DNA of 64,000 bases from assembly GCA_038496445.1 (NCBI GenBank), contig JALMLS010000299.1, positions 1 through 64,000 on the forward strand, given 5' to 3'. Of this stretch, positions 1-34,140 are shown one piece after another (position 1 is the stretch's first letter; the number at the start of each line of letters is the position of its first letter). A program made the position numbers and the translations under genes. The notes beneath the pieces are model-generated. The model was not told the origin of the DNA and made no database searches. It saw only the letters and a list, made by a program, of their open reading frames with translations. Source of the DNA: Trichosphaerium sp. ATCC 40318. Taxonomy: Eukaryota; Protista; Tubulinea.

Positions 1-460
1 TAAATTTTTATTGGATTATATGCTTTAAACACATACAAATACTTAAAATACTTGCTGAGCCAAAAATTTGGCATGATTGAGCTAGATATAAGGCATTGCC
101 TTGTATTTGCCTTTTACATAGAACAAAAACTATACATTTGTGAATGAAAATGCCTTGTTGATTTTCAGCTCTGAGCGAGATAAAAAGATTTCACATAAAA
201 AAAAGCTGATATAATATAATGCAGGTGTAAATGTATGGAAGTAAGAAAAAACACAAGTCTTGAGTTCAAAACATCTTTTACTACATTGGTAATCCTTTTA
301 AAAAAAATCAAAAAACAAAAGCTGTTAGCTTTCATTTTTTACTTAACCTTGGTGTGGCTTATATAAAAACAAACGGCAAAAAGATAAAAAATTACATCTC
401 AGCACATGGAGATGAAAAAGGAGAAGAATGAATAACACTGAAGATTTCTGAATACAATTT

Positions 461-858
461 AGTCGGGCCTCTGCCTCAGCAGGTCGTCGCACCCGAAGGC
501 TTGAGCGACTCCCTAGCTTACAACAGTAAATGCCCTAAGACCCTGTTCGAGTTCCCGTGGTTTACGGGGCCCCTGCGGGCGTTTGCTAAGACGTGCTACT
601 TGTGCCATAGTGTAGAACCTTTGCGGGCCGAAGCCTTTCGTTCGAGGAGGCGCAGCAACGACAATGTCGCCGCGCGGCTCTTGGCGGCTGGGTTTCCGAC
701 TTTAGAGGCCTTCAGCCGTACTCCCAATGGCGTGGCTTCGCGAACCGCCCTCTCGGACGTCCGCGGACACTAGAGGCCACCGATGCCCGTTCCTCTCGTA
801 CTGAGGCATCGCTACCGACGACGCGCATGTTAATAAAATAGGCCCACCAGTAGGGTAA

Positions 859-902
<44 letters not shown>

Positions 903-1619
903 GTAAGTGGGTGAACAATCCAACCCTTGGAGCATTCTGCTACACCTGGATAGGAAGAGCCGACATCGAAGAATCAAAAAGTCGCGTCGCTCTGAGCGCT
1001 TGGCGACCACAAGCCAGTTATCCCTATGGTAATTTTTCTGTCACCCCAGTGTCAGGTTACATGACTAGTCACGAGGGATCTCTAGGCCTCCCGTTAGGGT
1101 GCAAGAGCGATGGCTCCACTCTTGCTCAAGGGGGCTTTTAGCCTTGGCCTCTACGTGGGGTTTCTGTCCCCACTGAGCTCCCCTTAGGTCATCCGTGTTA
1201 CCCTATAGCGGATGTGCCGCCCCAGCCAAACTCCCGGCCACGCGCTGTCCGCCTTAATGCTTGTCAAAGTCCCGAAATCGGAAGGTAATCCGCACTTTCG
1301 ATTGGGCCCGCCTCATCCTAAGGACCGACTTGTATGGTTCGAGCAGCGCCACGTCCTCCGAAGAGGCAGGCGCTTTCGCCCGTTTTGAATGCGTCTGGGG
1401 CCCGACCTCCGGAGTAGAAGTGTTACACCTTTCGTAAAAAACTACTTCCTACCCTATACCTCCAGTGCCAAGCCCCTAAGCGTGGTGAGAGTCAAACTCA
1501 ACAGGGTCTTCTTTCCCCGCTGGTAGAAAAGTCGCCCGTTCGCGACTCTGTGGTTTCGCCACGGTCGGCGTAGGGACAGCGAGAACCTCATTCATCCATT
1601 CATGCGCGTCATTAGTTAC

Positions 1620-1669
<50 letters not shown>

Positions 1670-4283
1670 AACCCGTGCTTGGGTGAAATTAAGCACCGCA
1701 ACTTTCAAAGCACTGGGCAGGAGTCACCCTTTGTCAGACCTCAGAGGAGGTATCAAAGGGCTAAGTTTTAAGTAAACAGTTGGGTTCTCTAAGCTTCTGA
1801 GAGTTCCGCCATGATCCGCTTGTGGACCTCTTTGCAGGGACTGTGCACCGTTCCCGAAGGGGCTACACTGAAGTAGCGCAGATGCACGTCGTCCCGGGTC
1901 CCGGTCAGCAGAGCCAGCCCTTTTCCCGAAGTTACGGGCCGCGTATGCCGACTTCCCTTACGCCGTTTACACCGTGCAGCGCCAGAGGTGACTAACCTAG
2001 GGGACCTGATGCGGTTTTCGGTACGGTATGAGCCTGGAGGACACTGAACACCCGAAAGTGTCGGCTTCGGAGAGGAGCAGCCTCGTGAGAACGAGCTCAC
2101 CAACACCCCTAGAAAGCAAAAGTGCTTTCCCATTAGCTACCCTCGACTCTTTCCCTTCGCCGCTTTACGTGGCTCCGGGGAGTTTCCCTCGAATAGCTTA
2201 GGCGCGGGAGAAGGCCCCGCAGAAGTGTGGTTGCTCGCGTGCGCTCTCTCTCTCAGTGTTGCCACTTCTAAAGCAAATGCATCCTCCTTACCCATGCCCT
2301 GGATTACTCACCAGGTTGCCTTTCGCCGAGTTGAAAGCATCGCAGACTTCCACCAGTCTTCAGAACAGTAAAGTTCATCTGAACAAGTGTCGTCTGCCAG
2401 CATCAAACAGTATACTCTATTAGGAGCTGGCTTAGGACCGGCTAACTCGCAGCTGAATGCCATCACCGCGAAACCCTTCCCCACTTGGGCGACCTGGCTG
2501 TGATAAACACTGTTTCACCAGGCTCCAATTGCTACTACCACCAAGATCATCACTGCTGGTGGCTCCGGGTGGACGCCACCGCCCCCCTTCTACGCCACCA
2601 GCACGCCGTCCTACCGCACCCTGGGCCGAGCCGGGGCGATCGCGCAGCGGCGGCTAAGGCAGTTTAGCGCCATCCATTTTCGGCGCGTCCCAATTCGGCT
2701 GGTGAGAAGTTACTCACTCCTTAGAGGATGACGACTTCCATGTCCACCTTCCAGCTGTCTAAACTGGAACACCGCCTTCGTTGTCTTGGTTACTGCCTAT
2801 TCGGGCGCCTTTGCTGCTGCTCGCGTTTAAAACCGTCTCGTCAGTCCTGCTTATCAAGACCGGCCCAATAGGGGTCCACCGTCTCGGTGACCACAGCCAT
2901 TCGGCCTGTGGTCGGTCGCCTCTTATGTGTTTGATAATAGGTCGATGGCAACTTTGGCCTCCGATACCTCTTTCCAGTGGCTCTACGAGACGAGACCGGC
3001 GTCACGGACCCCCTCTATCCTTAGGGATACTTCGAACGGTACCAGCTACGTTGGCAGCTCGTTTGGTCTCTCGCCCCTATACCCAATGTCCGGCGAGCGA
3101 TTTGCACGTCAGCAACGCTACGGGCGTCCAGCGGGATTTCTCCCGCCTTCCCCCTTTTCGGGTATAGATCGCTACCTTTCGGGTATCGCCCAACGTACTA
3201 TCGCCTGCCAAGAGAACAACGCCGGAGATGGCAAAGTGTATCTACTTTGGTATGACGTGTTTTTAATTACTTGCGTAACATAAAAACATGATAATAGCAT
3301 AGTCGGTTTTTTATGTCGATCTTTGCAAACTTATACATGTAATGTAATACGTTTGTTTTTTTATAAAGAACTTGACGGCCTAGGAGCTTATCCTTGGCTT
3401 CATTTCTGTGCGGGTTGGAGGTTTGATCTCTCACCCTCGCACGCTCGGCGAACTCCTTGATCCGTGTTTCAAGACGGGATACACGGAGGCCATGGCCCAA
3501 TAAGGGCATAGAGCCTCATTGAGGTTGTGGACGATGAATGACGAGCTTCGTTCCTTTCGGAAGAAGACGTACATTCGGAGGTTCCAGTAATTTCAGTGAA
3601 CCAACGCCATTTAAAGGTTTAAAGTGCTTTTTGATGCCCTTTCAACCAAACCCACGTTTTTATGCTTTTCAGCTTGTAGGATGGTGTGGACAGCACGATT
3701 AGCCAGTATGACTTTTTTGTGTTAGTCACTTCTATGTTACCTTCCCCTCGACGTTTTGTTTCATTATAATCTTCCAGGGCACAAGGCCCCGGTCGCTTTT
3801 CCCTCGCTACAAGAGCGTCTGCCATGTGCAGATTAGGTGCAGGGCACCTACGTACTCCGTGCCATTTGTACCCTTGCCGGCTTCGGGTCTTTTAACCCTC
3901 TATCGAGGAGTGCTGTTTCAGTCTTCCCTCACGGTACTGGTGCGCTATCGGCCACCTCCCGATACTTAGCCTTGCCGGGTAACCTCCCGGTAACTTCGTA
4001 TGGCACGGCCAAACCATACTACTCCTGGACGATGGGACTCTATTTCCTCGGTTGACAGCGTACGGGGCTCGCACCCTCTACGGCTACGACTCGTGCGTAA
4101 TTCCCGTCAACGTCTGGAAGAGCCACCACGCCTTAGCCCACAACTCCGATGCTAGGCTCGGATTCAGGCTTGAGCTTGTCCCCTTTCGCTCGCCGCTACT
4201 CAGGGAGTCCCTTTTGGTTTCCTTTCCTCTGCCCCAATGATATGCTTAACTTAGGCAGGTCGCCAAGTGTAACTCAGGACGCA
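461..4283 (-). rRNA. LSU (28S-like) rRNA, divergent, ~3.8 kb
   Basis: Minus strand shows the sarcin-ricin loop CTCAGTACGAGAGGAAC (~789-805), PTC motifs GTCGTGAGACAGG and TTCGATGTCGGCTCTTCCTATC, ACCCGAAAGGT, CCGTCTTGAAACACGGA, and 5' GTTAAGCATATC...GAGGAAAGGAAACCAA; ends approximate. Confidence 0.97.
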
Positions 4284-4480
4284 AGTTGTGTTTTTTTATG
4301 CTTTCAGTATGTAGAACCAACCTTCCCTCTAAAGCTTCGCTTAAGTAAGCTAGGCATGAGTTCTGGAGGAACATCACTTCCGGCAATTTATTTAATTAGT
4401 TGTGGCAACCACTTTCTTTTTTAGAAGATTAAGTGTGTACACCATACGCAGCACCAAATAAATTTAGTGTTTGTTTTGCT
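4284..4480 (-). other. ITS2
   Basis: AT-rich spacer between 5.8S and LSU. Confidence 0.75.
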
Positions 4481-4645
4481 GGCGTCGCTGAGTCACGCTC
4501 CTTTGCCTGTGATTCGTGAGAATACAGAACGCGGCCTGAGGCATTCGGCAATGCCACCTTCAGATGAGAGCGATTCCGGTGGCTGGTTTCATAGTGATCC
4601 ATGGCCTTCTTCGGGGGAGGTGCCTAACCGTTCACCGACAAGGTT
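4481..4645 (-). rRNA. 5.8S rRNA, very divergent
   Basis: GC-rich island between two AT-rich spacers; 5' AACCTTGTCGGTGAACGG...CGAAGAAGG; its 3' end GTGACTCAGCGACGC pairs with the LSU 5' end GCGTCCTGAGTTAC, as expected for the 5.8S/28S helix. Confidence 0.8.
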
Positions 4646-4880
4646 TGGTTTCTTTCGAAAATCTTGACGTTCTTTATAGTCGTGCCACGACTGTGTTTTT
4701 GGTTTGCCAAAATGGCGGTTGTGGAGCTGGCAGATATACAAGATATCACCACAGTAGAGGAGACTATATCTTCACTTACCGAAGTAAGATTGGACTTGCC
4801 AGACCAAAACTGATACTCCAATTTCTTTTAAACTTGGTTAAAAGTTGGTTTAATTGCTTCTAAGGGTTAAATACCAATAG
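4646..4880 (-). other. ITS1
   Basis: AT-rich spacer between the SSU 3' end and 5.8S. Confidence 0.75.
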
Positions 4881-7529
4881 TATTGATCCTTCAGCAGGTT
4901 CACCTACTGAAACCTTGTTACGACTTCATCATCCTTTATGAGCGCAAGTTCGAGCAGGTTCGATAACCGGCAAGCCGGTCGTCCCCCCTGGTCTCACTCG
5001 CACCCACATCGGTCGATGCGACGGGCGGTGTGTACAAGCAACAGGGACAGATTCCAGGTGCGTTGATGACACACCTGTACGAGGCATTCCGCGTTCGTGG
5101 CTACAGTTACAGCAACCAGTCCCTAAGCACGCATGTGTCTTTTCGGAGAAGCAGCATTGAGCACACTTAACATCCAAATCGACCACACGGTGCGCTTTCA
5201 TGTATTTTTTTATGAACATTGCAGAAACTTACTTCATAATAAAGTTTGCCTTGGTAAAGATATAATCTTCCAAGTCAAAGCATTTAAGTGAAGAAGAAAC
5301 CTTATTTGTTAATTTGAAACGATCCACAGCTCTTTCAATGTTTACACTAAGGAACAAGTCCAAAGATGTAAGTTTTCATCTAACAGCGCTTCTCATCTTA
5401 ACATTAAAGGAATTTAACTTCCTAAAAAGCCTCGACGAGGGGGTTAACTCTTTATATTAGGTTCAGGACAGACTTTGTTTTGAAGGTGGTAGTTTCCGAA
5501 GGTGCGTTTAAGTGTAGTCGTATTTAGATAATTAAATCTGAGGTTTAACTCGCTGTCGTGAAGAAGTGTTCTGGCGGTTTCAGGGCTTGCCCGGATGCCT
5601 GTTCGGCCCAGGAACCCGTTGAACTAAGCAGTGTAGGCCGCGTGCGGCCCGGAATATCTGGGGGCATCCCGGATCTGTTATAGCCGCCGCTTCTTACGAC
5701 TTTTCGCCGTCAGTCCTGCACAGGGGTCCCGCACGAGGCGGGGGAATCAATGTGACAGTAGCGATCTCGCCCGTTATCGGAATAAACCTGACAGATAAGT
5801 CCACGAGCCTAAAACGACCATGCACCACCGTTAGCTAACTCGGAAAAGACCCTTCAGTCTGTTCGTCCCCTTAGAGCGTCCGATCCCGGTAAGTTGTCGC
5901 GCGTTGAGTCAAATTGAGCCGCAGCCTCCAGAGCCTGGTGGTGTTGCTCCGTCAATGCCTTTAAGTTTCAGCCTTGCGACCATACTTCCCCCCTGGGCCC
6001 GATTACTTCGGTTTCCCGTGGGAACGGGCCCCGAGCCTTGGTTTGCCCGGCGCCCATTCAGTCGGCATCGTTTACTGTGGAGACTACACGGGTCTCTAAT
6101 CCGCTTCGCTCCCTCCACCATCGTTCTAGATCACCGGCCACGCCCTTGCAGAGCGCCTTCGCTTCGGGTAGTTTGGATCAGGTCAAAAGATTTCACTCCT
6201 CGCTGATACCACACTCTCTACCCCGTACGCACCTAGTAATCGTGTGTTCTTTATTAGTGTGAAGACTAACTCAAGTTTTCCCTCAAAGTACTTTTGTAAT
6301 TCACAATGTTTTTATTCCCTTAATGAAGAACATAAGTTTTCACTCAGACTTGCATTTCAGGATATTGTTCATACTTAGTAAAATGAGACTTGAGCGTCGC
6401 ACTTGGTAAAGTGTTGTTTTTGTTTTTTTTAAAGCCCAATTCCAGGATGCTGGTGGGTGGCATAGCGGCCGAAGCCTAAACTGACCTTGCGTTTGAGCGA
6501 AGCCATTTATGCCTGGTCGGGCGATGAAAAAGAGTCGGGGGGTTTGTTCAAAGAGTAAATTCTTATCTAAACCTTGTCCCTCTCAGCTGTGTCGTTGTTT
6601 GGACTGCGAGCGCTTTAACAGCAACAGCAAAAGTATAAGCTTTCGGAGTGGGTGTTACCGCGGGTGCTGGCACCCAACTTGTCCTCCAATAGTTTCTCAG
6701 GGCGACATTCAGTTGCCCCTCATTGCGACGACCGGTTTAAATGCCGGCCTCGTTACACTCAGTCGCTGGCTCGATTTGCAATCAATGGCCAAGTTACGCG
6801 CCTGCTGTTACCCGTAAGTACAGGGGCCGTATCTAATGCCCCTTCTCCGGGAACCGAACCCTAGTTCCCCGTTACCCGTCACTGCCGCGGTAGGCCGTTA
6901 CCCTACCGCCTGGCTGATAGGTCGGCCGCCCTTCCGACTCGTGGAGGGGGAGAACTCTCAACTTTATATCGATATGATCTTTTTTATGAAAAAGCACATT
7001 CAGCGAAGGATCGAGATTTGAACAATGTTCATTTTTCTTTCACCTAGTTTCACTTATGTAAACTTTAACATTTTTTTTAGAAACATGTCTAGTCAGAGAG
7101 AACTCCTCATAACTCCATCGCATGCCCCAACGCCGCTCTTCCCGACGGAGTACGGACGCCGCTTCCTAAGGGGAGGCTGCTTCCCTTGGCGAACCAAGAT
7201 GGGATCGGGTGATCGTCCGCTCCTGAGCGTTGGATGCGACCGATGGGTCCTTGCAGCAGAGGGGCCCATCGGCAGCGCTAGGCGCATTACGTATTAGCCG
7301 CAGGTTTCCTTTAATCCCGGTTATCCGCGGGGGAGGCCACGAGTTTTGGTTATAGTGCGTTTAGGAAACAAGTTCCTGTGTGCAAAATGACGTGACCATT
7401 ATTAGTCTTGTCGGGTGGGTTACGACCGTTTTAAGGAGCCGTTTGCGGCTCCGAGGATACCTCTTTGCTGAGCTTGCATGGCTTAATCCTTCGAGAAAGC
7501 TTATCACTCCTGGCAGGCTCAACCAGGTA
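4881..7529 (-). rRNA. SSU (18S-like) rRNA, ~2.65 kb with large expansions
   Basis: 5' TACCTGGTTGAGCCTGCCAG, 530 loop GTGCCAGCACCCGCGGTAA, AAACTTAAAGGCATTGACGG, GTACACACCGCCCGTC, 3' AAGTCGTAACAAGGTTTCAGTAGGTGAACCTGCTGAAGGATCA. Confidence 0.98.
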
Positions 7530-7970
7530 CCTTTTGCATCAGAGTTTTTAAAGCAGATAGCTGCATTTAAAATAAATTCTCATCAGACCAAAGGTGGTTG
7601 AGGTTTTTAGGTGGTTTTTTGAAGAATGAACTTCATAAGAAACCATTCAATCTTTATTCCTATTCTCTTTCAAGGAGGATGTAAGATGAAGGTCTTTTTG
7701 ATGAACATCACAAATACCTGGTGCCGGACAACACCAGCCTTTCTTGTTGGAGAAGAAGCTGATGTGTCTTGGTTATGGTTTTTATGGCAAGAGATGCTCA
7801 TAGAGCACATTGCCACAACAGCATAGGGTTGTGTCTTTTTATGGACTACTTTTCTTGATGAGTCATGCTTATTTTTTACTGAGTAGCCCTTTAGGCATCG
7901 TCGGTAATAGCTTGCAACTGCATCATTTTTTATACACTCTTTTATTTTCTTTTGATTTTCTTTACTATTC

Positions 7971-8121
7971 AAGTACTTGAACTGTGTCTTTCCTTGATAA
8001 GCTTCAACTTGTAACTACTTGAGCTACACTTGGGTTTACTTATGTACTTGGCTTGTGTGCCTTTCCATCAATTTACCCTATACATCTTTTTAAACCCAAG
8101 TACTTGATAACTTGTCTTTCC
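7971..8121. repeat. Three degenerate direct repeats (AAGTACTTG...TGTCTTTCC) in the rDNA upstream spacer
   Basis: aagtacttgaactgtgtctttcc (7971), atgtacttggcttgtgtgcctttcc (8042), aagtacttgataacttgtctttcc (8098). Confidence 0.65.
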
Positions 8122-8240
8122 ATTAGGGTTTCTTAGGATGTGGCGCCTTTACAGTCTTTTTATGAACTAGTTGGAACACTTTGATTCCTTTCATCCACTC
8201 AAAGCATACACTTTGGACTGCAGGCTTGTATGAACTTACA

Positions 8241-9037
8241 TCTCTCGATTAGCATTTCTACACCTCCTTAAGAGGAAGTGTTATAATGTTAGAAGAGAGA
8301 CTAAGTCAGCTCATTTACATGATCTAGAACTCGATTGGCATTTCTACACACAATGGTGTTATAATGTCAGAAGAGAACCAAAGTCATGCTTTGTTTGATG
8401 GGTTTTTGTTGCCCACTGAGGGCTTCAAATACACACATCTTTTTAAGTACCGGCGATGTGACTTGCACATCATCAGTAACTATGGTGTTTTTTACATAGC
8501 TCAGTACTCGATTAGCGTTTCTACACCTTTTTTTTTCCTTTCGGAGGTAGTGTTATAACGTTAGAAGAGAACAATAGAGCCAATGCTTATGTTGTTGCCC
8601 ACTGAGGGCATCAACTACAACTACTACAATCGTTGTTCACTATGGAACTTCAACTGACATTGTTAGTGTACTCGATTGCTCAAGCACTCTTTAGATAGGT
8701 TAATGCTAACTACTTGAGATTGCATAAACCAATTCTAATGTATGAGATACCTCGATTAACATGGCCACACTACATTGCTGTAATGCATTACTCATGAAAG
8801 AAGAGGTATCTATGTTGTTGTTGTTGTTGTGTGACTTTTTAGAACTTGTTCATCACTCAGATGCACTCGGTTCAGGTCACTTGTTGTAGTAACAAATTAC
8901 TCGATTAGCATTTCTACTTCTCAACTAAAATATGAGATGTTCTAATGCTAGAAGAGCAAAGTTTGCCATTACATAAGTACTCGATTAGCATTTCTACACT
9001 TCAAATGAGTTGTTATAATGCTAGAAGAGAACTATGT
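8241..9037. repeat. Array of >=6 covarying hairpin repeats CTC-GAT-TAGCATT-TCT-AC..[variable loop]..GT-TAT-AATGCTA-GAA-GAG in the 5'ETS/IGS
   Basis: Copies at 8241-8300, 8330-8375, 8507-8569, 8745-8811 (variant), 8900-8956 and 8971-9037, plus a degenerate half at 8671; the arms are reverse-complementary with compensatory changes. Confidence 0.9.
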
Positions 9038-10739
9038 GACATTTGCCTGTTATGGAAGGGGGATGCAAAAAAAGCAAGTTCAAGTAACTACATAACAAAC
9101 ACATTCACCAACGGGCATCGTCATCGATGGATATACTAAGAGGCGAGTTGTAACTCGTCCTTTTCTATCACATAAGAAAAGCTAGAGTAGCCATAGTTGT
9201 GGTGTTGTGTGTTGCGTAGGAACGCGTTGCTGGTTTTGCTTCCATTCCAACTACAAGATGGGGGGGGGGGACATAAAGCAAGAGGTCTTACAGCCATATG
9301 CTCTTAAACGCGCAAAACCCAATTAAACGGTTCTCTCTGCGATAGAAGAATACAGGCTACCCTCTTGCGGAATATGCTTGTGTGTGTGTGTGGAGGTCGT
9401 TTCAGTGCTCTGTAGTTACAGAGTGACACGTTCGCGACACTTTCCAGCCCAATCAAGACACCTGCCTTGTGTAGACAAAGTGTTGCTTGATGGAGAGCCA
9501 AAAGTCGATTACCACTGTGTGGTGGTAGAAGATCAATGGCTCGTTAAGGTCCCTCAGCCGGTGTTGTGGCTACAAATGTGCTGCACGATGGGCGAGTCCC
9601 ATAACCACCGTGCACTCCCTGTGGGCTTTTAGGTCCAGCAATCTTTGCTTGGAGGTTGCGCTTTACCATCTTTTCTGTATCTTACCCGCTGTTGGGTTCA
9701 AAGAAAAAAATGGCGCGTCTGATTACCCTCCTTTTTTTTTTTTTGCGTGGACCTTGCCAAGGGAAGAGAAATGACTTTCTACAGGTGCGCACCACACAAT
9801 TTTTTTTGTAGCTCCTCTTGCAAGGGCGATAATGTCGCCTGTTGCTGGAACTAGCTCTGTGGTGCTAACCCTTAGCCAGCTTCTCTATTTGCGCCGCTTT
9901 AGGCTACACGGTTGCAAGACTGAGTCCCTTTCCCGAAAATATCGAGTTTTCATAGCCCTCACACCGCTTTTGTAACTCTTCTCTCCCTCTCTGACGTCGC
10001 GGCTGATTTAATTATTGGTATTACAAAAAAAAATGTACCGTGTTGGCGCGTTTTGTCTCGCTATGCGCTTTGTCTCGTTTTTTATTGGTGCGCTTACCCT
10101 CCCAAAACCGCCTTAAACTGTTCTCTATCGCCTCAAATCGCGTCTTTCTCTATTTTATCATCGGTACGGTTTTTGTGGATATTTTTGTCACAAAAAAAAA
10201 ACTTTTGGGTCTCAAAATCGCTTTATTTATGGTCTCCTTGCTCCTTACAAAGCCTTTTTGCCCCGATTACCCCTTTATTTCGCCTTTCCTGTCCATCGCG
10301 AATTTGCGTTGACAAAACGTCCACCTCCAAAAAAAAAAACCGGTCAGCAAACAAAAAAGACGCAAACCGATGCGACTTTCTGTGGTGGCTGTGCGTGCGT
10401 CGTTTAGTTTTTTTTGATGTGGATAAAAATAAATGTAAAAAATAACCCTTCCTTTTTCTCTGTGAGGCTCCAACCCAGCCCCTCCGCGCGCACGCCCTCC
10501 CTTTTGATATCTTCCTCCGTTACGTACAACAACAAAAACCCCCCCACACTCCACAATCCAATTCGATGCGCGGCGTCATTGCAACTGTGTAGAGATATGA
10601 AACTTATTTCTGCTTGCACTAAATTTAACTGTTTGGTATAATCAAGCGCTCAATGCTGGTGACGCCTGTTTTTTATTTGTACAATTTACAATAGTTTTTT
10701 ATCTACACTTTTCTTTGCTCAACGCTAACAAAAAGCGCC

Positions 10740-31947: not shown

Positions 31948-34140
31948 CTATCGAAAAGACTTCCGAAACTCCACTGCATATTTTTTCTGATGTAAGTTAA
32001 GGCAGAATTTTTCCTCAAAGGTTGTTTATGACTTGAGTAAACATTGGTCTATAAACTCTTCGAAGAGTGTCAATATTGAACCCACAGTCCAAAAATATGG
32101 CCCCCGCTATAGACTTTGAAAAGAGGTAAGCTTACTACCATAATAATACTTGGAAGAAAAGTGCGTAGTACCTCAAAAATATCACCAAGAAATTTCGGTA
32201 CTTTTCCTTTACCTGCATTGTAGTTTGATAGCCTTTGCTTGATAGATGGCCCATTTGTGATGATAAACTTGTGTAATCCGTTTTCAAAGCATACACGGGA
32301 GAAAACAGCATTACTTGTTAACTTTGATCTTGCACGTGCTGTTTCTATAAATGGGTGTTCTTTTTTAGACAAGCAAAGCATCTCACACAGCACTAACTCC
32401 AAGACTGCATCACCCAAGAATTCAAGACGCTGGTAGTCTTTTGTACTTGTTAAAATAATAAGTCATTGCATTTATATACAAGTAGCGCACAATGAATTTG
32501 AAGCACCTGATCCGTGAGTCATTGCCTCTACCAACAGGAATTTATGGTTGAAATCGTATTGTAATTTTTTTTCCAGATTTCGGAAGTTTAGTTTGTTAAA
32601 CACTTTGTCAATGCTTATTTGCTTCCTGTACTTGTGTGTACCGGCTAGTGAAGACGCTTCCCATTTGATATCAATACCACATTGCCTGTGGTCATGTCAG
32701 TTTGAAAGTATTTCATCCTTGCTTACATTGCTAGCATTGCTGCACTTTGGATACCTTTCTCATATAGGCAAGCACCAATTAGGGCCTCAACAGTCTTAGT
32801 GAGCTGTTTGTCAGTTAAAATTTTCATGAGTTTTTCTTGTTGCTCTTCTGCTGTACTATTTGCGTTTGCGTATCTAAAAAACATCTAATACGAGTAAACA
32901 AACTGTACCAAAAAGTACTAGATGTACATTTTGAGAATAATCTATATTTGGTGGGTTTGTAGGGTGCATGTATTTGGGACATCCGAGCTTCAATGCGCAA
33001 TATCTTAATTTGTTGCCATAAAGTATTTCAAGACGCTTTTCGGTAAGCACACCTTCGGACTGAGATGGAAATTGTTGAAACACAGTAATGCCTTTTTATT
33101 TTTAGCGAAGTAATAATTCGCTTGTGCTGCTATTGCTTACCTGCCAAAAACTTGAGCGTGGCATTGCCGATGATGGCTAAGAAGGGGTAAGTAATGTTCG
33201 GTTTCAACCAAGCAATATTTTGAATGTCTAACAAGTGGTAAGTAACTGGGTGACAAAACACCTTGGTACCAGTTCTCCTGGAAATTGTTAATGCTTCAAA
33301 TACTGACGCAATAGATAGGTGTAAGTTGCAGTGTCTCATGAACTTTTGAGCGTTAAGGACATGCTCCAGGAACCACAACAACTTTGGAAGAATGACATAT
33401 TTATCGCAAAAGGCTTGGTCAAACGGTACCTCACGTGGACATAAGCATAATTAAATAGCAACAGAAAGGAGTGTACAAGAAAACATCCATCTGCAGCAAT
33501 TGTGGTTGTTTCACTGGTACTGTTATCTACATTCAGCTTTCGTACTTGCAGTGTTGGTGGCGTAGTGTTCAATACACTCAATAGACACGTAAGAAATTGT
33601 ACTCACATAGCTAGGCTTACCGCTGGACAACCCAGTACAAAGAATGACGCGAAACAATGGCACTTTGTAGTTCCGTCGCTGACACACAAAATATCTCATT
33701 TGCTGTTATTGGCCTCAAGCCTTTCTCGACGGCGTCTTTGTATAATTGCCAGTCCAATTTACCGTTCAATAGAGGGCATACCAAATGCTGAATTACACGC
33801 TCTGTTTTCTGCCTGCGCCTTGTCGTGGCGTCAGTAAACATGCAGTGAAAATTGTAGAGCGTTTGAAGCTGTTCATCGCTAAAATTCTCCTGTCCCGAGT
33901 AAACTAGCTGAAAGTCTTCCCAGCCACGATGCGAATCTTCACAAAGCTGTTCTACGCTTAAAATACAGAAAAGACTTGTTTCTGGCAAGTGTAAGAAAAT
34001 AACGTCGCTACATTGTATACAGTACCTCCACAGGTACTACGTGGGCGAACTTGCACAATTGTTTTGAAAAAAGAATGCGCTCGAAGCGTATCATCGCTGT
34101 CAATACGTAACGCGCGCAACCGTTGCGTAATCGATGCCAT
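31948..34140 (-). CDS. Minimal Dicer-like protein (no helicase; degenerate RNase IIIa, intact RNase IIIb)
   Basis: RIIIb: YDFNHKFLLVEAMTHGS, DYQRLEFLGDAVLELV, RSKLTSN, VPKFLGDIFESIAGAIFLDCG; RIIIa: YPFLAIIGNATLKF, FPSQSEGVLTEKR, TDKQLTKTVEALIGA; connector-like PKLLWFLEHVLNA; 3' end approximate. Confidence 0.88.

What the first reader, a model, noticed from the sequence alone, without database searches (positions are those of the whole stretch)
8241..9037. Array of covarying structured hairpins upstream of the rRNA genes
Six units share a fixed scaffold: basal CTC/GAG stem, GAT/GAA internal loop, 7-bp stem, TCT/TAT internal loop, AC(AC)/(GT)GT stem, then a fully variable apical part. The 7-bp stem covaries: TAGCATT/AATGTTA (8241), TGGCATT/AATGTCA (8330; A-T to G-C), TAGCGTT/AACGTTA (8507; A-T to G-C), TAGCATT/AATGCTA (8900, 8980). 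The basal stems extend with copy-specific complementary arms (TCTCTC/GAGAGA, AGATACCTC/GAGGTATCT, ACATAAGT/ACTATGT). The unpaired internal loops are nearly invariant while paired bases covary, which is the signature of a selected RNA structure and protein-binding motif rather than an ordinary IGS subrepeat. The strand is ambiguous: G-U pairs in the 7-bp stem favour plus (antisense to rRNA), while a C(GAAA)G tetraloop in copy 3 and other wobbles favour minus (pre-rRNA 5'ETS). Inference: a multivalent processing or loading platform in the 5'ETS, or a polycistronic small-RNA precursor. I know of no named family with this consensus.
Basis: partly seen in the sequence, partly recalled or inferred. 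Interest (0 to 1): 0.8.

Follow-up and report, generated by a model that had tools for sequence, protein, structure and literature searches.

The report
Conserved hairpin repeats upstream of rDNA
An amoeba-like protist carries at least 150 copies of a small, tightly conserved hairpin repeat inside a 2-kb non-coding module that sits upstream of every ribosomal RNA gene unit and at about 20 other places; the structure is real and matches no known family, but its acting strand and its job are still open.

Summary
Window 8238-9035 has five canonical hairpins, and there is one degenerate copy (8745-8811) and a short variant (9498-9539). All share CUC/GAG, a GA/AA loop, an 8-bp stem, a UCU/UAU loop and ACAC/GUGU, under a variable but self-complementary tip. 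On 57 distinct copies, 95.7% of cells pair and 9 of 15 pairs show double changes.

This scan found the same family before on paralogous rDNA pieces of this genome (s1-400886, s1-400867, s1-383700, s1-400731, s1-411282).

New here:
- The genome has at least 148 copies. About 20 arrays have no rRNA gene within 5 kb.
- The array is part of a roughly 2-kb module (7970-9980) with fixed order. It ends in an unstructured, highly conserved block 2.27-2.48 kb from the 18S start.
- The 386 nt next to 18S are 96-98% identical in all 23 units, whereas the module is only 70-80% identical. The array therefore lies outside the homogenised rDNA core, so a 5'ETS platform is unlikely.
- Arms evolve about ten times slower than the spacers between them.
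- Wobble evidence does not pick a strand.

Best reading (0.4): repeated protein-docking hairpins in a spacer transcript, like mouse IGS-rRNA/pRNA. The main rival is DNA-level cruciform enhancer repeats, as in myxomycete upstream promoter regions. I could obtain no RNA data.

The parts
8238..8303 (+). Hairpin A, copy 1. The orientation is that of the model; the acting strand is unresolved. It has a basal extension UCUCUC/GAGAGA, G.U at 15:65 and C.A next to the ACAC/GUGU stem.
   Evidence: R1 score 74.0 bits; RNA fold -24.4 kcal/mol, z -5.95.
8324..8381 (+). Hairpin A, copy 2 (stem UGGCAUU/AAUGUCA; A-U changed to G-C at pair 14:66).
   Evidence: 68.5 bits; z -3.46.
8405..8428 (+). Motif B, copy 1: a small palindromic element, GCCC-ACUGA-GGGC flanked by UUG/CAA.
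   Evidence: 57 copies genome-wide, all inside modules, control 0; fold z -2.1.
8501..8575 (+). Hairpin A, copy 3 (stem UAGCGUU/AACGUUA; A-U changed to G-C at pair 17:63; long tip).
   Evidence: 72.7 bits; z -1.54.
8591..8614 (+). Motif B, copy 2.
   Evidence: fold z -3.8.
8745..8811 (+). Degenerate hairpin variant. It keeps the CUC/GAG stem and the GAU/GAA loop and has a 9-bp basal extension. The same variant recurs in other arrays.
   Evidence: 19 bits, E 0.043; z -3.62; the same variant is seen in C6, C12, C34 and C126.
8894..8962 (+). Hairpin A, copy 5.
   Evidence: 66.6 bits; z -3.88.
8974..9035 (+). Hairpin A, copy 6.
   Evidence: 75.9 bits; z -2.79.
9099..9212 (+). Conserved module block. 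It contains a variable small hairpin (9142-9159) between conserved flanks and ahead of CUUUUC.
   Evidence: 86% identical to non-rDNA loci L039 and L045; 74-96% among rDNA units; flagged as terminator-like.
9491..9546 (+). Short hairpin variant. It has the same GA/AA-U.G base motif on a different stem (UACCAC/GUGGUA), with the first basal pair flipped to G-C. It lies at the same relative place in non-rDNA modules.
   Evidence: 24 bits; fold -22.5 kcal/mol, z -4.3; homologues in L034 and L042.
9574..9628 (+). Conserved module block.
   Evidence: 87-92% identical in non-rDNA loci.
9885..9965 (+). Terminal block of the module. It is the best-conserved piece across all module families and is not structured, so it is a candidate promoter or terminator.
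   Evidence: 31 copies, found in all 21 array-bearing rDNA units at 2.27-2.48 kb from the 18S start and in non-rDNA modules; alignment; fold z +0.35 and +0.71.
7970..8106 (.). Left edge of the module. It holds perfect 10-bp palindromes CAAGTACTTG at 7970 and 8097, plus related GTACTTGG...CCTTTCC motifs.
   Evidence: homology with non-rDNA loci starts at 7969 or 8042.
7535..7920 (-). rDNA-specific leader next to 18S (5'ETS and probably the promoter), homogenised among all units. It is not part of the module.
   Evidence: 96-98% identity over its full length in 23 units and no other match in the genome; identity profile.
4881..7529 (-). 18S (SSU) rRNA gene, 2649 nt.
   Evidence: RF01960, 1034.8 bits.
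661..4282 (-). LSU rRNA gene.
   Evidence: RF02543, 1722.3 bits.

Best explanation
The hairpins form the repeat body of a separable, roughly 2-kb non-coding module (window about 7970-9980). The module accompanies every rDNA unit, starting about 0.4 kb upstream of 18S, and also stands alone at about 20 other intergenic or subtelomeric places. I think the module is transcribed as a spacer RNA, most simply from its conserved terminal block toward the rDNA. Each hairpin would then be a docking site for one sequence-specific protein. That protein would read the invariant asymmetric internal loops (GA/AA plus U.G, and UCU/UAU) held on a stem whose pairing, but not sequence, is kept. An array of 3 to 11 such sites would make a multivalent platform that tethers or regulates rDNA chromatin or nucleolar association, in the manner of mouse IGS-rRNA/pRNA and its stem-loop that binds TIP5. 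Shown: the structure, the covariation, the slow evolution of the arms, the module architecture, and the position outside the homogenised rDNA core. Inferred: transcription, the acting strand, the protein partner and the regulatory role.
For: - Structure: 95.7% of cells pair, 9 of 15 pairs have double changes, and 0 of 500 shuffles reach the score.
- Loop bases: the internal-loop bases are invariant or nearly so in 57 distinct copies.
- Rates: between the orthologous arrays of C75 and C12, arms are 99.0% identical (197/199), spacers 89% and tips 79%.
- Tips: the tips differ in sequence but remain self-complementary, with mean z of -1.7 on the + strand and -2.1 on the - strand over 39 tips.
- Base motif: the same base motif sits on a different stem in the short variant.
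- Order: hairpin A, motif B, the internal blocks and the terminal block keep one order and orientation in all loci.
- Position: the first hairpin lies 689-741 nt from the 18S start in all 21 units.
- Terminal block: it is unstructured yet the most conserved piece, about 1.95 kb from the homogenisation boundary. This matches the layout of the mouse spacer promoter, its 2-kb IGS-rRNA and the T0 terminator (PMC9575697).
- Not independent genes: no external promoter motif lies at a fixed distance from single hairpins.
Against: No RNA evidence could be obtained. Five exact-ORF look-ups and one protein search came back blank. Wobble evidence does not single out a strand, which is not what a one-strand functional RNA usually shows:
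- The scaffold has one invariant U.G and one invariant C.A.
- The tips fold equally well on both strands, 24 against 19.
- Isolated mismatches favour the + strand in the scaffold (G.T 22, A.C 0) and the - strand in the variable stems (A.C 31, G.T 2, mostly one recurrent C.A).

Motif B and the CAAGTACTTG palindromes look like ordinary palindromic DNA-binding sites. No relatives outside this genome were found, so conservation between species is untested. The standalone modules have no rDNA to regulate.
Confidence: 0.4

Rival explanations
1. These are DNA-level cis-elements. The array would be a Pol I upstream enhancer or upstream-promoter-region repeat whose inverted repeats extrude as cruciforms or are read as single-stranded DNA. 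Candidate readers are HMG-box/UBF-like proteins or origin or barrier proteins. Standalone copies would act as natural 'pseudo-NOR'-like sites.
For: The position upstream of the homogenised rDNA core, in arrays, is typical of spacer enhancer repeats. G.T-type and A.C-type mismatches are balanced between strands, as expected if both strands matter equally. Neighbouring motifs B and CAAGTACTTG look like palindromic protein sites. [quoted passage not shown]
Against: The internal loops would weaken a DNA cruciform, yet they are invariant and asymmetric between the arms. The distance between the arms varies from 6 to about 30 nt, which a dimer on duplex DNA would not tolerate. Selection on duplex-DNA binding sites gives no reason for the fast-evolving tips to stay self-complementary.
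Confidence: 0.28
2. The array is a polycistronic precursor of small RNAs. Each roughly 60-nt hairpin would be cut by a Dicer- or RNase III-type enzyme into about 20-nt RNAs from the conserved arms (miRNA- or endo-siRNA-like), or released as a roughly 60-nt hairpin RNA.
For: The two 20-nt arms are conserved while the tip varies, which is the pattern of clustered pre-miRNA families. Several hairpins in one orientation are packed within 0.8 kb. Basal stem extensions exist in some copies.
Against: Five of the 20 arm positions lie in internal loops. The arms have no complementarity to the pre-rRNA beyond shuffles. Pattern hits in the genome are essentially all hairpin copies, so no obvious trans targets appear. 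No Rfam miRNA family matches. There is no small-RNA data.
Confidence: 0.14
3. The hairpins lie in the 5'ETS of the pre-rRNA (rRNA-sense strand) and form a loading or processing platform for ribosome-assembly factors.
For: The array is always upstream of 18S in a fixed orientation and at a fixed distance. The recurrent C.A next to the ACAC/GUGU stem reads as G.U on the rRNA-sense strand. If the terminal block were the main Pol I promoter, the 5'ETS would be about 2.4 kb long and would include the array.
Against: Homogenisation of the rDNA stops about 400 nt upstream of 18S, and the array region is only 50-80% identical between units. The same arrays occur at about 20 loci with no rRNA gene and no 5'ETS-proximal sequence. 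Copy number per array varies from 3 to at least 9.
Confidence: 0.08
4. This is selfish or neutral DNA: a foldback or MITE-like element, or a subtelomeric satellite, spread with segmental duplications. Palindrome-correcting replication errors would keep the stems paired.
For: Many arrays lie within 2-25 kb of contig ends. Standalone modules belong to multi-kb repeat families that are 90-99% identical. Template-switch mutation can create paired changes without selection (established knowledge).
Against: There are no target-site duplications, all copies in an array share one orientation, and the order relative to the other motifs is fixed. The arms are 99% conserved where the spacers are 89%. Palindrome correction would erase the internal loops, which are instead invariant.
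Confidence: 0.08

Closest known systems
[quoted passage not shown]
   Same: Both are in Amoebozoa-type organisms. Both are arrays of repeats just upstream of the Pol I unit, each repeat holding an inverted repeat able to fold on either strand. Copies within an array are similar but not identical. The function is presumed regulatory and is unproven in both cases.
   Different: The myxomycete units are 260 bp with 140-bp palindromes on an extrachromosomal rDNA. Here the units are 55-75-nt imperfect hairpins with invariant internal loops and covarying stems, upstream of dispersed chromosomal rDNA units and also at loci without rDNA.
Mammalian spacer promoter, IGS-rRNA and pRNA with the TIP5/NoRC-binding stem-loop (review PMC9575697)
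   Same: A conserved element lies about 2 kb upstream of the gene promoter, repeats lie in between, and palindromic elements sit just before the rDNA core. In both, a hairpin in the spacer RNA would be the functional unit.
   Different: pRNA has one functional stem-loop overlapping the promoter, not an array of 3 to 11 near-identical hairpins. Transcription is not shown here. The mammalian system has no standalone copies away from rDNA.
Xenopus 60/81-bp and mouse 140-bp rDNA enhancer repeats
   Same: These are arrays of short repeats between a spacer promoter and the gene promoter. Ectopic arrays can act without rDNA (pseudo-NORs).
   Different: Those repeats are not hairpins and show no covariation. 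They act as duplex DNA bound by UBF.
Dictyostelid Class I RNAs (PMC7919456)
   Same: Both are amoebozoan families of roughly 60-nt RNAs with conserved ends forming a stem, a variable middle, and clustered intergenic genes.
   Different: Class I genes each have a DUSE about 60 nt upstream, an 11-nt motif and AAG...CUGU ends. None of these is present here.
Clustered pre-miRNA families
   Same: Both are hairpins of about 60 nt with two conserved 20-nt arms and a variable loop, several in tandem in one orientation.
   Different: The duplex here has a 2x2 and a 3x3 internal loop. No small-RNA data, targets or Rfam match exist.

Membership tests
rDNA intergenic-spacer subrepeats or enhancer-type repeats | Tandem or clustered short repeats located upstream of the Pol I transcription unit | tested here: met
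   Arrays of 3 to at least 9 copies lie 689-741 nt upstream of the 18S start in 21 of 23 units. They lie outside the homogenised 386-nt leader.
rDNA intergenic-spacer subrepeats or enhancer-type repeats | Confined to rDNA | tested here: not met
   About 20 arrays (C14 x9, C93, C234, C248, C354, C136, C343 and others) have no Rfam rRNA hit within 5 kb and no 18S or leader match.
5'ETS element of the pre-rRNA | Lies between the Pol I start and 18S | tested here: inconclusive
   The start site is not mapped. The homogenisation boundary at about 7925-8000 and the standalone copies argue against this placement. A start at the terminal block is not excluded.
Dictyostelid Class I RNA | DUSE-type promoter element about 60 nt upstream of each gene | tested here: not met
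   This genome's U6 genes carry GGCAATGCC...ACCACAA...TTTAAAAATGG upstream. No such element, and no conserved motif at any fixed distance, precedes the hairpins.
Dictyostelid Class I RNA | Conserved 11-nt motif next to the 5' stem and AAG...CUGU termini (PMC7919456) | tested here: not met
   The hairpins begin CUCGAUUAGC and end GCUAGAAGAG.
microRNA precursor cluster | Hairpin with conserved roughly 20-nt arms and a variable loop | tested here: met
microRNA precursor cluster | Discrete 20-24-nt products with Dicer-type ends | not testable with these tools
   No small-RNA data could be reached.
microRNA precursor cluster | Match to a described miRNA family | tested here: not met
   Rfam at E up to 5 gives only mir-4766 at 7853-7898, 18.4 bits against a gathering score of 72, and that hit lies outside the array.
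MITE or foldback transposon | Terminal inverted repeats flanked by target-site duplications, with independent insertions in either orientation | tested here: not met
   The flanks are AG.A and .AC with no duplication. All copies in an array share one orientation and keep a fixed order with motif B and the blocks.
Kink-turn (L7Ae/15.5K-binding) motif | 3-nt bulge followed by tandem sheared G.A and A.G pairs | tested here: not met
   The basal loop is symmetric, 5'-GA-3' opposite 5'-AA-3' next to a U.G pair, and has no bulge.

The most novel reading that the evidence does not exclude
The module would be a gene for a new class of nucleolus-associated non-coding RNA. This would be a roughly 2-kb transcript (or its roughly 60-nt products) carrying 3 to 11 copies of a hairpin whose invariant purine-rich internal loops bind one dedicated protein. 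Together they would build a multivalent RNP scaffold beside every dispersed rDNA unit. The standalone copies (for example nine along 170 kb of contig C14) would mark extra nucleolus-associated or silenced domains.
Probability: 0.3. Interest if true: 0.7.

Novelty: new variant of a known kind. Interest (0 to 1): 0.45.

Why it matters
Repeat arrays upstream of rRNA genes are known regulators in vertebrates, and fold-back repeats are known in slime-mould rDNA. In no case, however, is the repeat a small hairpin that combines invariant internal loops, stems that change by paired substitutions, and arms evolving ten times slower than their surroundings. That combination points to a specific binding partner, which a simple hairpin pull-down could identify. 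This organism has about 23 dispersed single rDNA units plus about 20 rDNA-free copies of the same module. It therefore offers a natural test of whether such upstream modules act on their own, for example in nucleolar tethering, silencing or replication, or only together with Pol I genes.

Tried and rejected
1. Known RNA family: Rfam at gathering score over the window, and at E up to 5 over 7530-10100, found nothing relevant. Rfam over 15 standalone loci found no rRNA or other RNA.
2. Relatives elsewhere: a left-arm scan of metagenome contigs gave 96 single hits. None holds a full hairpin by the covariance model, so they are chance matches. The viral contig scan gave 0 hits. A literal sequence search of papers gave 0 hits.
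3. RNA evidence through spurious ORFs: five exact look-ups and one protein search were all blank.
4. Spacer promoter as a duplicate of the gene-proximal region: the best local alignments are T-rich stretches no better than shuffles. The short shared words (GCCTAAAG, TTGCAA) are not significant.
5. Arms as guides against the pre-rRNA: complementarity is no better than for shuffled arms. An RNAduplex version timed out.
6. Independent small genes with a U6-type promoter: no such element was found, and no motif lies at a fixed distance.
7. MITE: rejected.
8. Link to neighbouring MORN-repeat genes: seen at only two loci, so taken as coincidence.
9. A first strand test that counted all transition-type mismatches was swamped by unpaired positions. 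It was replaced by isolated mismatches inside helices.
Identity percentages from the search tables were used instead.

Full report
**Setting.** The window is the first 64 kb of contig C75 of a 70-Mb eukaryotic assembly with 642 contigs. Rfam places an LSU rRNA gene at 661-4282 and a long (2649-nt) SSU rRNA gene at 4881-7529, both on the minus strand. The finding (8241-9037) therefore lies 0.7-1.5 kb upstream of 18S. Earlier notes of this scan describe the organism as a marine amoeba and had already reported the same hairpin arrays on paralogous rDNA pieces (s1-400886, s1-400867, s1-383700, s1-400731, s1-411282). I treated these notes as leads only.

- The 18-nt left arm occurs five times on the + strand, against 0.07 expected. 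The right arm occurs five times at matching distances, against 0.03 expected.
The z-scores run from -1.5 to -6.0.
- The sixth unit (8745-8811) is a degenerate variant that keeps only the base (19 bits).
- A seventh element at 9498-9539 carries the same base motif on a different stem. Its first basal pair is flipped from C-G to G-C.
- A small second motif, B (GCCC-ACUGA-GGGC flanked by UUG/CAA), lies at 8405-8428 and 8591-8614.

**Covariation.**
- I built a covariance model from 27 copies (A1, R1) and aligned 100 matches, 57 of them distinct (A2).
- 95.7% of cells form standard pairs, and 9 of 15 pairs show changes on both sides. No shuffle out of 500 reaches the observed covariation score. Sliding the partner by 1-3 columns drops pairing to 25-51%.
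- The unpaired loop positions are invariant or nearly so.
- Pair 15:65 is irregular: G-C 19, G.U 9, A-U 7, A.A 11, G.A 9, U.C 2.
- The tips differ completely in sequence but are significantly self-complementary, with mean z of -1.7 on the + strand and -2.1 on the - strand over 39 tips.
- Between the orthologous arrays of C75 and C12, the arms are 99.0% identical (197/199), the inter-hairpin spacers 89% and the tips 79%. The arms are therefore under strong constraint, the tips evolve fastest, and the tips still pair.

**Distribution in the genome.**
- The model finds at least 148 copies. Only 150 candidates were scored, so this is a lower bound. The plain pattern finds 158 copies against 5-7 in the control.
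- There are 23 rDNA units, and 21 of them carry an array. The first hairpin is always 689-741 nt from the 18S start, and the model orientation is always opposite to the rRNA.
- About 20 arrays are not next to rDNA: nine along C14:347-516 kb, plus C93, C234, C248, C354, C136, C343, C27, C55, C126, C133, C164 and C616.
- Fifteen of these stretches have no Rfam hit within 5 kb, and none has an 18S or leader match. They lie between ordinary genes (MORN repeat, 2OG-Fe(II) oxygenase, SET). They belong to multi-kb non-coding repeat families.

**The array is part of a larger module.**
- The standalone loci share more than the hairpins with the window. They also share, in the same order and orientation, window 7969/8042-8304, 9099-9212, 9574-9628 and 9881-9977.
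- The last block (9885-9965) is the best-conserved piece across all module families (alignment). It is present in 31 places, including every array-bearing rDNA unit, at a constant 2.27-2.48 kb from the 18S start. It has no fold better than shuffles, with z of +0.35 and +0.71.
- Motif B has 57 copies, all inside modules and all in the hairpin orientation, against 0 in the control. It lies 20-37 nt after a hairpin in about 40% of cases. It is conserved in sequence rather than by covariation.
- The left edge of the module holds perfect CAAGTACTTG palindromes.

**Relation to the rDNA transcription unit.**
- The 386 nt next to 18S (7535-7920) are 96-98% identical over their full length in all 23 units and occur nowhere else.
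- The next segment, 8000-8240, is 98% identical only in the recent duplicate C6 and 70-80% identical in all other units.
- A five-unit alignment puts the break at about 7925-7970. This is also where homology with the standalone modules begins, at 7969.
- The rDNA core is therefore homogenised among the dispersed units, and the module is not. The array is thus unlikely to belong to the functional 5'ETS, although a distant start at the terminal block is not excluded.

**Strand.**
- Whole hairpins fold better as + strand RNA in 48 of 57 copies, with means of -15.5 against -12.3 kcal/mol. This rests on the invariant U.G at the base of the 8-bp stem.
- The scaffold also holds an invariant C.A in the UCU/UAU loop, which is a G.U on the other strand.
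- The tips fold equally well on both strands, 24 against 19.
- Isolated mismatches inside helices are G.T-type in the scaffold (22 against 0, all at pair 15:65). In the variable stems they are A.C-type (31 against 2, mostly one recurrent C.A next to ACAC/GUGU that reads as G.U on the rRNA-sense strand).
The usual one-strand wobble signature of a functional RNA is absent.

**What it is not.**
- No Rfam family matches.
- It is not a Class I RNA. This genome's U6 genes show a GGCAATGCC...ACCACAA...TATA-like promoter, but nothing of the kind, and no motif at any fixed distance, precedes the hairpins. The defining 11-nt motif and termini (PMC7919456) are also absent.
- It is not a MITE. There are no target-site duplications, and the orientation and order are uniform.
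- It is not a kink-turn, because the loop is symmetric.
- The arms are not complementary to the pre-rRNA beyond shuffles.
- No relatives appear in metagenome or viral contigs, and the sequences appear in no paper searched.

**Best explanation (confidence about 0.4).**
- The layout runs from a conserved unstructured block about 1.95 kb upstream of the rDNA core, through arrays of repeats, to palindromic elements just before the core. This parallels the mouse spacer promoter, its 2-kb sense IGS-rRNA ending at T0, and pRNA, whose stem-loop recruits TIP5/NoRC (PMC9575697).
- I therefore favour a spacer transcript in which each hairpin is a docking site for one protein that reads the invariant internal loops. 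An array would give a multivalent platform.
- The structure, the constraint and the architecture are shown. Transcription, strand, partner and role are inferred.

**Main rival (about 0.28).**
- The same elements may act as DNA, as cruciform-forming enhancer repeats. This resembles the inverted repeats nested in direct repeats of the Didymium and Physarum upstream promoter region (PMC13182076).
- This reading explains the strand-neutral mismatch pattern and the palindromic neighbours.
- It does not explain the invariant asymmetric loops, the variable spacing between arms or the self-complementary tips.

**Limits.**
Only five rDNA units and sixteen standalone stretches were studied base by base.
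- Copies are related by descent, so the shuffle controls overstate independence.

**Verdict.** This is a real, strongly constrained, lineage-specific hairpin repeat family. It belongs to a separable upstream-spacer module, not to the conserved 5'ETS. It is a new variant of the known class of rDNA upstream spacer repeats, and was already met by this scan on paralogous DNA. The new facts are the standalone copies, the module anatomy, the homogenisation boundary and the strand-neutral mismatch pattern.

Noticed in passing
window 7535-7920 against 8000-8240: There is a sharp homogenisation boundary among the 23 dispersed rDNA units. The leader next to 18S is 96-98% identical everywhere, even against the recent duplicate C6 (97%). 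The next 240 nt are 98% identical in C6 but 70-80% in the other units. Concerted evolution acts on dispersed single units and stops about 400 nt upstream of 18S.
   Followed up: partly
window 1-7529 and contigs C6, C12, C34, C123, C125, C166, C257, C284, C293, C410: rDNA units are single and dispersed. Most lie within a few kb of a contig end, with the LSU gene facing the end, which suggests subtelomeric rDNA. No telomere repeat is visible in window 1-660.
   Followed up: partly
window 4881-7529: The 18S gene spans 2649 nt against an 1831-position Rfam model, so it carries large insertions. Earlier notes of the scan propose AT-rich spacer-like inserts.
   Followed up: no
window 7970-7979 and 8097-8106: There are perfect 10-bp palindromes CAAGTACTTG, each followed by a ...CCTTTCC-type motif, between the rDNA core and the hairpin array. 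They are also present at the same edge of standalone modules. They are candidate protein sites, for example a promoter-proximal terminator.
   Followed up: partly
window 9142-9166: A small hairpin of variable sequence lies between conserved flanks (TATACTAAGAG ... CTTTTCTATC). The stem differs in L034 and L042 but is kept. Its shape is terminator-like on the + strand.
   Followed up: partly
window 9262-9271, 8813-8830, 9380-9392: Simple runs lie inside the module: G10, (TGT)6 and a short (GT)n.
   Followed up: no
G000 C42:130105-130211, C5:13029-13136, C8:806777-809093 (L143-L146): There are 17 U6 snRNA matches, 16 of them above the family cut-off. The four copies inspected (L143-L146) share one upstream layout: GGCAATGCCATTTCT, then ACCACAA (DUSE-like) at about -55, then TTTAAAAATGG at about -30. 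They end in a T7 terminator.
   Followed up: partly
G000 C14:347000-517000: Nine standalone modules, each with 2-3 hairpins, motif B and the terminal block, are spaced 5-44 kb apart in both orientations along 170 kb of one contig.
   Followed up: partly
window 32730-33230: An earlier first-reader note flags a minimal Dicer-like gene with a degenerate RNase IIIa domain in this window. I did not examine it, and I have no evidence of any link to the hairpins.
   Followed up: no
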